A stretch of DNA of 63,864 nt, counting the filler, from Ministeria vibrans ATCC 50519 (Eukaryota > Protista > Filasterea), in assembly GCA_943704425.1 (NCBI GenBank). It is 12 parts of 12 records of this genome, joined end to end, with 100 filler letters (N's around TTAATTAATTAA, not from the genome) between each part and the next. Parts side by side here need not be neighbours in the genome. Positions count along the whole stretch, not along the records: positions 62,188 to 63,864 come from CALSCP010002224.1; 11 more parts are not named here. The stretch is one strand, 5' to 3'. The notes below the pieces were generated by a model. That model did not search any database. It saw nothing but the letters and a program-made list of their open reading frames with translations, and was not told where the DNA came from. Shown one piece after another: positions 17,651 through 63,864 of this stretch. A program made the position numbers and the translations under genes. Each line of letters opens with the position of its first letter. Position 1 is the stretch's first letter.

Positions 17651-18705
17651 TTTTTTTTTTTTTTTTTTTTTTTGGTAAACTTTCAGGTAACCTTTCATTG
17701 ATACAAGCCAACATAAGACTCTCAGACGATATTACAAAACTGCGTGTCAATAGCAACCCTGCACGCCCAAGAAGACCCAAGGCACCCATCCCTCTCACCC
17801 TTCAGCCCACACTTAGGCTGATGGGTAAGAGTTCTACAAGTTATTTTTTTTTCTCTCTGCAACACACTCTAGGAAAACGTAAACAAAAACAAAACAAAAA
17901 CAAATCATCACTCCTCCTCATGCGGAAACTAATCCAGCCGTGGAGGGCGTCACGAAGTGCCGTGACGCGTAGTGGCTCTCTCTCACTCTCTCACTCACTC
18001 TCTCTCTCTCTCTCACTCTCTCACTCTCAGTTGTTGTCATCCGTGTGAGCGTCGTCGCCCCCATTGTTGCCTGTCTTGATGCGGTTCTGGTACCACTCCT
18101 GGGCACCTTTAACCGCTTCAGTCGTCACCTTCTTCAGTCTCTTCCACTTGCTCCTAGGGCACTTCTGTTTGACTCCCATCTCCCAGAAACCCGTCGCCCG
18201 TCTGATCGCTGACTGTGCACTGATTGCCCTAAGCAGCTCCGCCTTGTCCATCCCGTCCATTCGCCATCGTTGGATTTCCTCCCTCACCTTCTTCAGCGTC
18301 CCTTCGGCACAGGACTCTTCCTCACCGTCGGCTCCCTTGCAACTGAGCAGGTGCTCCGTTGACTCCACAATGCCGTCGTCACATCTCATGCACAACGTGC
18401 CAGTGTCGTCCTCGGCCGTCGCCGCCCCATATCCTCTCCTCATGTCCACCTCTTTGCATTTGAGTAGCCCCACCACCGCTCGTACAGCAAACCGTCGTCT
18501 TGCAAACGGAACGCCTTTGCACAGCTGTGCAAACCACTCATCGTCTCCACCCTTCACCGTCTCCCCCTGTCGTCTCAGGGCCTTCCACCTGTCTCTCCGC
18601 TCTTTCTCCTTCTTTTGTTCACACACCTTAAAAGCTAAACGTGCTTCTCGTCTCGCACGCCCCGTGCCCCCATCCGCGTCTTTGAGCACCAATGTCTGTC
18701 GGTCG
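17651..18705 (-). mobile_element. 5'-truncated non-LTR retrotransposon (L1/Tx1-like ORF2 C-terminus, 3' UTR, poly(A)) with 16-bp TSD
   Basis: Open frame to stop at 18027 with CCHC knuckle CMRCDDGIVESTEHLLSC; poly(T) 17651-17673; flanking direct repeat ACTGATTTTTGCGTCC at 17635-17650 and 18706-18721. Confidence 0.9.
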
Positions 18706-62187: not shown

Positions 62188-62801
62188 CCTGTGCAAACGA
62201 AGACGGCGAAACAGCCGCGGCTCTTGTGGCTTCGCTGATGAATGCAGGTGTCGATCCGACAGTTGAGGCACATGAGGATGCGACGACGACTACAGCAGCA
62301 GCAACAGCAAGTGGTGTTGTGGCCTACTCAGTAGCAAAGACCAAGGCCGCGCGTGATGCAATGCGACGACACATGGCACGCCACCCGGACGCGTGTGATT
62401 GGGCGCGCGCCAAGGTTCCCGGTCCACTTACGGTCGAGATGGAGGAGGCGGCGCGCGAGAAGGAGCGGGCACGCAAGCAGCGTTTGAAACAGGCTAAGCA
62501 ACGACGAGAGCAGCGCGCGCGCGAAGAAGCCGAGATGATTCACCGACAAGAGGAGGAGGCCAAGAAGGCGGGTCGACCCGGTGAGACGGATGTGCAGCGA
62601 AAGCAGCGCGAGGCTCGTGCGGCCGCTGCATTGAAGCGACTTGGGCCGGCGGGAGTGGCAACAGGAGGTGCACCTGTGTACACGTGTGACGCGTGTGGGA
62701 ACACCCTCGCACCAGGTGAGATTCCCTTTGAGCGGCTCACCTATCAGTACTGTTCCGTCGTGTGTGTGCGGGAGCATCGCGAGCGGCTCGATAGACAGTA
62801 G
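62188..62801 (+). CDS. ANKZF1: ANKZF1/Vms1, 3' part (coiled coil plus VATC treble clef)
   Basis: HPDACDWARAKVPGPLTVEME and CDACG...PFERLTYQYCSVVCVREHR. Confidence 0.85.
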
Positions 62802-63085
62802 CAAGTGTACATAATTATAGTAACAATTATCATAATACTAAATTATTATTATTATTATTTTTATTATTATTATATTGAACTCAAGTGCCTTTCGTTGTAT
62901 ACAAGGCCAACAGAAGACTCTTGGTTTGCATTTCATTTTTTTTTTGGAAGTCCTAAAACAAAAGCTTCTGGTGGTCAGTGAGAGATCTACAAGAACTTGC
63001 ACCCCGCAGGTGCTTTTCCTCTCTCTACTCGTCTCTCTCTACTCGTCTCTCTCTGCCGTCTCTCTATCACTCTTAGGACACACTC

Positions 63086-63350
63086 CTCCCCATGTGAAAT
63101 AGTGTGTTCCACTGCGGAGGGGCGCCACTGAAAAGCAACACGTTGCATGCAGTACTACACTTCGACTTGATATTTCGTATTTACCACTCTACTTTTCTAG
63201 TATTACGTATATTTTTCGCGTAATAGATAGTATGAAGTTCCCTGAATTAAATATATATTTTCACCTTATATCACTTATAAAATTTATGTAATACTTTAAA
63301 TTACGTATTAGACGAAATATGTACAAATATAATCGTTGGAACAGCTTAAT
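63086..63350. repeat. GC-rich cap plus AT-rich spaced-motif module, copy C (uninterrupted)
   Basis: CTCCCCATGTG...TTCCACTGCGGAGGGGCGCCACTGA (matches 17597-17639), then TTCGC (63215-63219), GAAATA (63314), ACAGCTTA (ends 63348). Confidence 0.65.
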
Positions 63351-63424
63351 TTTATCATATTCATGAAATATGAGAACGAAAAGAAATGGGCAACAAAGAG
63401 CCTCAGAGATAAAGAATGTGTGTG

Positions 63425-63492
63425 ACTGAGAGTCTTAAGGATGTTGGCTTGTCAATGAAAGTCATCTGAACGTTTAAACAATTTAAAAAAAG
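63425..63492 (+). mobile_element. 3' end remnant of LINE family R2
   Basis: GACTGAGAGTCTTA...ATGTTGGCTTGT-CAATGAAAG...CTGAA-GTTTA followed by an A tract; matches the terminus of the element at 17651-18705. Confidence 0.75.
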
Positions 63493-63598
63493 GGGGTGTT
63501 TTTTTTTTGAAACCCTAGGGATGAAAGTTGAAATTTAACAAGTTGTGTGTGTAGGCGCCTGTGTGTGAACAAAAAAAAACAGAGATGGAAAGAATCAC

Positions 63599-63671
63599 TT
63601 TTTTTTTAGGAAATCCTAGGGCATAAACTTCATTGTACAAGACAATCTAATCATCGCTTCACCCTTGCATG
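63599..63671 (-). mobile_element. Retroelement 3' tail, family R1 (shorter stubs near 3773, 62935, 63498, 63701)
   Basis: Reverse complement reads GGGTGAAGC...TAGATTGTCTTGTACAATGAAG-TT-TGCCCTAGGA-TTCC then an A tract. Confidence 0.8.
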
Positions 63672-63762
63672 AGCCAAAGCGGATATTCCGAGAGACATTA
63701 TTTTTTTGGAAGTCCTAGGGCAAAAATTCCGAGACTTCCATGCAGAGCCATTTATTTACCCA

Positions 63763-63848
63763 TGCGGGGGTGAAGCAGCCGCTTCGGATGGCTAGATTGT
63801 CTTGTACAATGAAGCTTTTGCCCTAGGACTTCCAAAAAAAAAAAAAAA
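63763..63848 (+). mobile_element. Retroelement 3' tail, family R1, with poly(A) and 13-bp TSD
   Basis: Direct repeat ATTTATTTACCCA at 63750-63762 and 63849-63861 flanks about 70 bp plus poly(A). Confidence 0.88.
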
Positions 63849-63864
63849 ATTTATTTACCCAAGG

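What the first reader, a model, noticed from the sequence alone, without database searches (positions are those of the whole stretch)
62930..63864. Two retroelement families pile up around the AT module: candidate targeted safe-haven integration system
Seen: every R1 and R2 piece I found lies within about 0.6 kb of a module copy once the LINE at 17651-18705 is excised (2857, 3773, 3865; 17455, 17651; 62935, 63425, 63498, 63599, 63701, 63763). They occur in both orientations, and I saw none elsewhere in the window. The two clear TSDs differ in sequence, so any targeting would be regional rather than sequence-specific. Established analogy: Dictyostelium TRE and yeast Ty elements target tRNA-gene neighbourhoods in compact genomes. 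No tRNA gene is visible here, so the landmark may be new.
Basis: partly seen in the sequence, partly recalled or inferred. Interest (0 to 1): 0.82.

Follow-up and report, generated by a model that had tools for sequence, protein, structure and literature searches.

The report
Pile of truncated LINE tails
Just downstream of an ordinary eukaryotic gene lies a small heap of broken-off tail ends of poly(A) retrotransposons, at least two of them inserted in or right beside older copies. This is a known way such elements pile up, and nothing in this 1.7-kb piece shows a new homing system aimed at the AT-rich stretch.

Summary
Five copies of one retroelement 3' end (…TTTTGCCCTAGGACTTCC + A-run) lie in 930 bp of AT-rich spacer, where chance predicts none. 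They start 134 nt after the stop codon of a Vms1/ANKZF1-like gene. Four are on the minus strand and one on the plus strand. Two have clear target-site duplications of different sequence. At least two families share only the last ~33 nt plus one upstream motif. No tRNA, 5S or snRNA gene was found.

The interpretation, homing on an "AT module", cannot be tested on one 1.7-kb contig. Every attempt to find the genome, or any other copy of these elements, failed. The local anatomy points to something simpler. The right-hand 366 bp is an array made almost only of 5'-truncated 3' ends. The two youngest copies (18-nt and 71-nt bodies) lie inside or within 80 nt of an older copy. The 250-bp AT core itself holds no insertion. 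This resembles the nested 3'-end arrays of Zepp/ZeppL LINEs. It could also be tolerated-space accumulation, or the "module" could be part of the R2 element. Organism and LINE clade are unidentified. Interest is low to moderate.

The parts
62190..62801 (+). 3' end of a Vms1/ANKZF1-like gene (203 codons plus TAG stop). It is cut by the contig edge and has 62% GC.
   Evidence: Pfam VATC (Vms1-associating treble clef), E = 7.8e-13, residues 165-200. Relatives with VLRF1+VATC are 41-47% identical. Translation.
62802..62935 (.). AT-rich spacer or 3' UTR (25% GC) containing an (ATT)n microsatellite at 62842-62873.
   Evidence: Positions 62859-62921 are weakly similar to the reverse complement of 63429-63491.
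62936..63160 (-). Its tail is A10 (62936-62945) and its body runs from 62946. The 5' limit is only approximate, placed where GC drops. It contains a 14-nt tandem repeat, CTCTCTCTACTCGT x3.4, at 63019-63065.
   Evidence: It shares the terminal 33 nt with copy D at 87%, plus a TGCGGGG(G)TG motif about 70 nt from the tail. The sequence between differs. No TSD was found. No Rfam or tRNA similarity.
63161..63410 (.). No retroelement tail lies inside it.
   Evidence: Composition. There is a weak imperfect palindrome at 63194-63300, but the fold is no better than shuffles, z = -0.22. No RNA family match.
63429..63491 (+). Possible further plus-strand retroelement piece ending in A7 (63485-63491).
   Evidence: Only a weak inverted similarity to 62859-62921. 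Not established.
63499..63598 (-). Copy A, a divergent relative of the same 3' end, with tail A10 (63499-63508). The body may be short, because an unrelated A9 run at 63571-63579 suggests a mosaic.
   Evidence: 61% identity to the reference over 33 nt, with CCTAGGG at the same offset from the tail. No TSD.
63599..63684 (-). Copy B, an older member of the first family, with tail A9 (63599-63607). Homology to D runs to 63671. Whether B continues to the contig end is undecided.
   Evidence: 89% over 57 nt against D, plus a further 16-nt arm, with a 10-nt indel. No TSD within the contig.
63697..63725 (-). Copy C, an extremely 5'-truncated insertion: an 18-nt body (63708-63725) plus the impure tail AAAAAAATAAT. 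It is flanked by the TSD ATTCCGAGAGAC (63685-63696) / ATTCCGAGAC (63726-63735).
   Evidence: 28 of 28 nt nearly identical to D (I4, 96%) and 0 mismatches to the tail pattern. TSD.
63763..63849 (+). Copy D, a 71-nt body plus an A15-16 tail. It is flanked by a perfect 13-bp TSD, ATTTATTTACCCA (63750-63762 and 63849-63861; its first A overlaps the last A of the run). It is inverted relative to B and C.
   Evidence: (D9, I1, I4). Homology to B extends 2 nt into the TSD, i.e. microhomology at the truncation point (I10).

Best explanation
The region is a small nest of 5'-truncated 3' ends of poly(A)-tailed non-LTR (LINE-type) retrotransposons. It lies in the AT-rich spacer directly downstream of a Vms1/ANKZF1-like gene of an unidentified eukaryote.

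**Shown**
- At least two related families share the last ~33 nt before the tail. A third, more divergent form also exists.
- Copies of very different length end at the same 3' nucleotide followed by an A-run.
- Two copies carry 10-13-bp target-site duplications of unrelated sequence.
- The two youngest copies lie inside, or within 80 nt of, an older copy.

**Inferred**
- The copies were made by target-primed reverse transcription. The reverse transcriptase recognises the shared 3' end, which is how two families come to use one tail.
- The endonuclease is not sequence-specific.
- The heap grows because new copies land in or next to earlier copies (Zepp-like nesting), and because in a gene-dense genome only such spacer DNA tolerates them.
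- The AT-rich core is pre-existing spacer, or part of one element. It is not a recognised landmark.
For: - **Motif:** 4 hits against 0 expected, plus a fifth divergent copy. Five of seven homopolymer runs are tails.
- **Truncation series with a common 3' end:** bodies of 18 nt (C), 71 nt (D), at least 64 nt (B) and about 215 nt (E).
- **TSDs:** a perfect 13-bp one around D and a 10/12-bp one around C.
- **Age order:** C and D match the pattern with 0 mismatches. B has 3 mismatches and is 89% identical to D, so C and D are younger than B.
- **Array:** 63499-63864 consists almost only of such ends, with start-to-start spacings of 101 and 99 nt.
- **No landmark gene:** no tRNA or Pol III-type RNA gene.
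- **AT core:** it holds no insertion.
Against: - Nesting is not proven. Homology of B to other copies stops at 63671, so C and D may lie beside B rather than inside it.
- Only three insertion targets can be judged, and only two TSDs are visible.
- There is no coding part, so LINE clade, endonuclease type and even autonomy are unknown.
I could not see those contigs. A strict, repeated association there would need more than this explanation offers.
- The two nick sites (…AAAT^GG, …GAGAC^TT) show no A/T-run preference. So a simple L1-like taste for poly(A)/poly(T) tracts is not supported either.
Confidence: 0.5

Rival explanations
1. The AT-rich stretch is not a target. It is part of the second family (R2) itself, or of a composite repeat unit consisting of the R2 3' region, the AT stretch and the 63429-63491 piece. 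The module and the R pieces then travel or duplicate together, and the first-family copies are later insertions into that unit.
For: - E has no TSD, and no definable 5' end, anywhere in the contig.
- E abuts the AT core directly.
- The contig ends inside repeats, as expected where an assembly breaks in a multi-copy unit.
- A weak inverted similarity brackets E plus the AT core.
Against: - GC content changes sharply, from 48% to 27%, at about 63160.
- No second copy of the module was available to test collinearity.
- The bracketing similarity is not significant after correcting for the number of comparisons.
Confidence: 0.2
2. Purely passive accumulation. Insertion is essentially random, and copies survive only in the short AT-rich spacers of a gene-dense genome. 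Survivors therefore look clustered without any preference for earlier copies or for a landmark.
For: - The gene is 62% GC and the spacers 25-39% GC. All copies lie in non-coding DNA, beginning 134 nt after the stop codon.
- The TSDs and nick sites show no consensus.
Against: - Five or more copies lie in 930 bp, and the three judgeable targets all lie in or at another copy.
- The AT core and the first 134 nt of spacer are empty.
- With so few events this argument is only suggestive.
Confidence: 0.18
3. Both families are actively directed, for example by tethering of an element protein to a chromatin or DNA-bound factor, to the neighbourhood of the AT module. The module would be a new kind of safe-haven landmark unrelated to Pol III genes.
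For: - The clustering is real.
- There is no tRNA, 5S or snRNA gene in the piece.
- Two families with the same 3' end co-occur.
- The target sequences differ, so any targeting would have to be regional.
Against: - There is no fixed distance or orientation relative to the AT core. TRE5 and TRE3, by contrast, insert 40-54 bp upstream or 40-150 bp downstream of tRNA genes (PMC5911963).
- The AT core has no distinctive structure or RNA gene.
- The youngest copies relate to an older copy rather than to the core: they start 287 nt and about 350 nt to its right.
- The association with modules elsewhere is unverified.
Confidence: 0.12

Closest known systems
Zepp / Zepp-like (ZeppL) L1-clade LINEs of green algae (Chlorella, Coccomyxa, Chlamydomonas)
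   Same: They form clusters made mostly of 5'-truncated 3' ends with poly(A) tails, generated by insertion of new copies into existing ones (PMC8226300; PMC3446292). Here there is an array of 3' ends at 63499-63864, with the two youngest copies in or beside an older one.
   Different: - Zepp clusters are 1.5-42 kb, GC-rich relative to the genome, and occur once per chromosome at presumed centromeres or telomeres.
- This heap is under 1 kb visible, sits 134 nt from a gene, and includes both orientations.
- No RT sequence is available to test relatedness.
- The host is not identified as a green alga.
Dictyostelium TRE5/TRE3 and yeast Ty1/Ty3 (Pol III gene-targeted retroelements)
   Same: Retroelements in a gene-dense genome end up in a narrow intergenic zone. 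Several families share the same neighbourhood. For the TRE elements, the products are also non-LTR elements with oligo(A) tails.
   Different: - Those elements sit at defined distances from a tRNA or 5S gene and depend on TFIIIB/TFIIIC (PMC5911963).
- Here no Pol III gene is present in the piece.
- Distances and orientations are scattered.
LINE/SINE or LINE/LINE pairs sharing a 3' tail ("stringent" 3'-end recognition; established knowledge, e.g. the Okada laboratory's eel UnaL2/UnaSINE1 work; plant L1 example in PMC3472496, seen)
   Same: Two families (E versus B/C/D) differ in their bodies but share the last ~33 nt and one upstream motif. This is expected if one reverse transcriptase recognises that 3' end.
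   Different: It is not shown that E is a SINE: it has no Pol III promoter or tRNA-like head. No autonomous partner has been identified, and no significant conserved RNA fold was found (z = -0.02).
Sequence-specific LINEs (R1/R2 in rDNA, Tx1, microsatellite-specific elements; established knowledge)
   Same: They produce repeated insertion into one small region.
   Different: Those elements cut one defined sequence. Here the two TSDs, ATTTATTTACCCA and ATTCCGAGA(GA)C, are unrelated.

Membership tests
Poly(A) non-LTR (LINE-type) retrotransposition products | Copies end in an A-run at a fixed 3' nucleotide | tested here: met
   Five copies have A7-A16 directly after ...GGA(C/T)TTCC or its divergent form.
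Poly(A) non-LTR (LINE-type) retrotransposition products | Variable 5' truncation | tested here: met
   Bodies of 18, 71, at least 64 and about 215 nt share the same 3' end.
Poly(A) non-LTR (LINE-type) retrotransposition products | Target-site duplications flanking individual copies | tested here: met
   D has a perfect 13-bp TSD. C has a 10/12-bp TSD. None was found for E, A or B.
Poly(A) non-LTR (LINE-type) retrotransposition products | Element encodes RT and endonuclease | not testable with these tools
   No coding part lies in the piece. The sense frames carry stops or only short open stretches. No other copy was retrievable.
Zepp/ZeppL-like nested LINE clusters | New copies inserted into existing copies, giving arrays of 3' ends | tested here: inconclusive
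   An array of 3' ends is present at 63499-63864. C and D lie inside B only if B extends past 63671, and that cannot be shown.
Zepp/ZeppL-like nested LINE clusters | L1-clade RT related to Zepp; one cluster per chromosome | not testable with these tools
   There is no RT sequence and no chromosome-scale context.
Pol III gene-targeted retroelements (TRE5/TRE3, Ty1-4) | tRNA, 5S or other Pol III gene next to the insertions | tested here: not met
   ARAGORN found 0 genes. Rfam gave no hit at E <= 1 and only two meaningless hits at E <= 10. The caveat is that the contig ends at 63864.
Pol III gene-targeted retroelements (TRE5/TRE3, Ty1-4) | Defined distance and orientation relative to the landmark | tested here: not met
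   Tails lie about 225 nt left of the AT core and about 89, 189, 287 and 439 nt right of it, on both strands. The rule is taken from PMC5911963.
Sequence-specific LINEs | Same target sequence at every insertion | tested here: not met
   The two TSDs are unrelated, and the five tail-flanking sequences share no consensus.
SINE (for copy E) | Pol III promoter-bearing head derived from tRNA, 5S or 7SL | tested here: inconclusive
   No tRNA or Rfam similarity, but the 5' end of E is undefined.
Vms1/ANKZF1 (the neighbouring gene) | C-terminal VATC treble-clef domain after ankyrin and coiled-coil regions; VLRF1 catalytic domain | tested here: met
   VATC is met (48.5 bits against a cut-off of 26.6). 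The VLRF1 part lies off the contig. Relatives carry VLRF1+VATC.

The most novel reading that the evidence does not exclude
Two LINE families that share one 3' end are actively steered to the surroundings of a repeated AT-rich element that carries no Pol III gene. This would be a new kind of regional safe-haven landmark (for example a chromatin- or origin/centromere-bound factor) in a gene-dense eukaryote whose lineage is not represented in current protein collections.
Probability: 0.1. Interest if true: 0.7.

Novelty: new member of a known kind. Interest (0 to 1): 0.27.

Why it matters
If the AT stretch really attracted two retroelement families, it would add a Pol III-independent landmark to the few known safe-haven strategies of retroelements in compact genomes. 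What the piece actually shows is a familiar outcome: truncated LINE tails nesting in spacer DNA. Its practical value is modest:
- It documents uncatalogued LINE families with a shared 3' end in an unidentified eukaryote.
- It flags that short contigs of this assembly break inside such nests.

Tried and rejected
**Searches for the elements or the genome**
- Two exact-pattern scans of metagenome contigs, one with the tail and one with the conserved internal 22-mer, found nothing.
- A viral-contig scan gave one hit, a chance match inside a coding region.
A BLAST of the piece against all fetched loci showed only 22-29-nt pattern-level matches, so none is related.
- An exact look-up of the encoded protein found it not on record.
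- Contigs encoding the nearest Vms1 relatives (L002, L003, L123-L126) lack the tail motif.

**Identifying the organism**
- The best relatives of the Vms1 fragment are 41-47% identical. They are scattered over a cryptophyte, a lycophyte, a duckweed, a charophyte, a chromerid, a fungus, a coral, fishes and birds, so they give no resolution.

**Structure and coding tests**
- The 3' end of D folds no better than shuffles (z = -0.02).
- The AT core as DNA folds no better than shuffles (z = -0.22).
- Coding potential of the element sense strands: B is open for 36 codons up to a TAG inside the conserved CCCTAGGA. This is not significant, and a 10-nt indel breaks the frame between B and D.

**Other**
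- A literature search for the tail sequence returned only unrelated primer matches.
- Twin priming was rejected as the cause of the inverted B/D pair, because D has its own tail and its own perfect TSD.

Full report
**What the piece is.** Only 62188-63864 is real sequence.
- Positions 62190-62801(+) are the 62%-GC 3' end of a gene. Its last 36 residues match the Pfam VATC domain (Vms1-associating treble clef) at E = 7.8e-13.
- Relatives carry VLRF1+VATC and are annotated ANKZF1/VLRF1-domain proteins. The best are only 41-47% identical and come from every corner of the eukaryotes.
- The host is therefore a eukaryote that I could not place. Its own protein is not in the collections.
- Everything after the stop codon is non-coding and much lower in GC, at 25-48%.

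**Checking the observation.** A shared retroelement 3' end, …TTTTGCCCTAGGACTTCC followed by an A-run, occurs four times at 3 or fewer mismatches. Shuffles expect 0.00. A fifth, more divergent copy has the CCTAGGG core at the same offset from a T10 run. Five of the seven homopolymer runs of 7 nt or more in the spacer are such tails. I label the copies as follows.

| Copy | Position and strand | Main features |
|---|---|---|
| E | 62936 to about 63160 (-) | A10 tail, body of about 215 nt, 5' end undefined |
| A | 63499 to about 63598 (-) | divergent relative, A10 tail |
| B | 63599 to at least 63684 (-) | older first-family copy, A9 tail |
| C | 63697-63725 (-) | 18-nt body plus impure tail |
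| D | 63763-63849 (+) | 71-nt body, A15-16 tail |

- D is bracketed by a perfect 13-bp duplication, ATTTATTTACCCA.
- C is bracketed by ATTCCGAGAGAC / ATTCCGAGAC.
- A 9-nt exact match in that geometry has a chance probability of roughly 1e-4 (my estimate).
Region 63429-63491 resembles the reverse complement of 62859-62921, with 13 of 5000 shuffles reaching the score. That is uncorrected for 56 comparisons.

**How many families.** B, C and D are one family.
- B and D are 89% identical over 57 nt, with a further shared 16-mer and a 10-nt indel.
- C and D are identical over the 18-nt body.
- E shares the terminal 33 nt at 87%, and a TGCGGGG(G)TG motif about 70 nt from the tail. The stretch between differs.
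- A is a third, more distant form.
- Different bodies with one 3' terminus is the pattern expected when a reverse transcriptase recognises a specific 3' end. This is established knowledge on LINE/SINE tail sharing; a plant L1 case is PMC3472496.
- I found no significant RNA fold to go with it. No coding sequence is present to classify the elements.

**Anatomy of the heap.** From 63499 to the contig end, 366 bp consist almost only of these 3' ends.
- A, B and C follow head to tail, with start spacings of 101 and 99 nt. D is inverted.
- C and D match the tail pattern perfectly, while B has three mismatches. C and D are therefore younger.
- Removing C and D with one TSD copy each leaves a continuous stretch to the right of B. 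If B runs on beyond 63671, both are nested inside it. If B is truncated there, they lie 13-80 nt beyond its 5' end.
- B, A and E have no TSD within the contig. That fits B running off the end, but it does not prove it.
- The 250-bp AT core (63161-63410, 27% GC) contains no tail. It has no significant fold and no tRNA or Rfam family.
- Tails lie about 225 nt to the left of the core and about 89, 189, 287 and 439 nt to its right.
- The nick sites deduced from the two TSDs (…AAAT^GG and …GAGAC^TT) and the five tail-flanking sequences share no consensus.

**Most likely mechanism.**
- These are products of target-primed reverse transcription by a non-sequence-specific LINE machinery that recognises the shared 3' end. 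This is inferred from the tails, the truncation series and the TSDs.
- The heap probably grows because new copies land in or beside earlier ones, and because only spacer DNA tolerates them in a gene-dense genome. The first tail starts 134 nt after a stop codon.
- I hold this at about 0.5.

**Rivals.**
- The AT stretch belongs to the R2 element or to a composite repeat unit (0.2).
- Purely passive survival in spacers (0.18).

**Comparison with known systems.**
- The TRE5/TRE3 and Ty model requires a Pol III gene and a defined distance (PMC5911963). Neither is met here.
- Sequence-specific LINEs require one target sequence. That is not met either.
- Membership in the Zepp lineage cannot be tested without an RT sequence. 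The resemblance is in behaviour only.

**What could not be done.**
- I could not recover the genome or any other copy of the elements.

**Verdict.**
- I classify it as a new member of a known kind, of low to moderate interest.

Noticed in passing
window 62190-62801 (+): C-terminal 203 codons of a Vms1/ANKZF1-like ribosome-quality-control protein (VATC domain). The nearest relatives are only 41-47% identical and are spread across eukaryotes, so the host lineage is not represented in the protein collections.
   Followed up: partly
window 62842-62873: An (ATT)n microsatellite of 10.7 units starts 40 nt after the stop codon. On the minus strand it would read as a (TAA)n-like tail of a possible further retroelement piece at 62859-62921.
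   Followed up: partly
window 62859-62921 and 63429-63491: These two stretches form a weak inverted repeat (about 70% with gaps; 13 of 5000 shuffles, uncorrected). It brackets copy E plus the AT core. It could be two head-to-head copies of another element, terminal inverted repeats of a composite unit, or chance.
   Followed up: partly
window 63019-63065: A 14-nt tandem repeat, CTCTCTCTACTCGT x3.4 (94% matches), lies inside copy E within a longer CT-rich tract.
   Followed up: no
window 63541-63579: A GT-rich stretch ends in an A9 run on the plus strand, inside what I call copy A. It is possibly the tail of yet another short insertion, which would make the array more of a mosaic than described.
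   Followed up: no
window 63599-63843: The inverted pair B/D, with C between them, forms a 245-bp imperfect palindrome (66% over 262 columns). This is the cause of a meaningless weak Rfam hit to a miRNA precursor family.
   Followed up: yes
window 63608-63864 (-): With C and D set aside, the sense strand of B is open for 36 codons up to a TAG inside the conserved CCCTAGGA motif, 8 nt before the tail. D and E have a TAG in the same place. This might mark the end of the element ORF. It is not statistically significant, and the frame is not conserved upstream of a 10-nt indel.
   Followed up: partly
L002 (Logan SRR32476553 contig, 7162 nt): The contig encoding one of the most similar Vms1 C-termini (47% identity) also shows GC-richer genes (about 50-58%) separated by 36-39% GC spacers, and has an actin gene next door. 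It is a compact eukaryotic genome of unknown identity and lacks the tail motif.
   Followed up: partly
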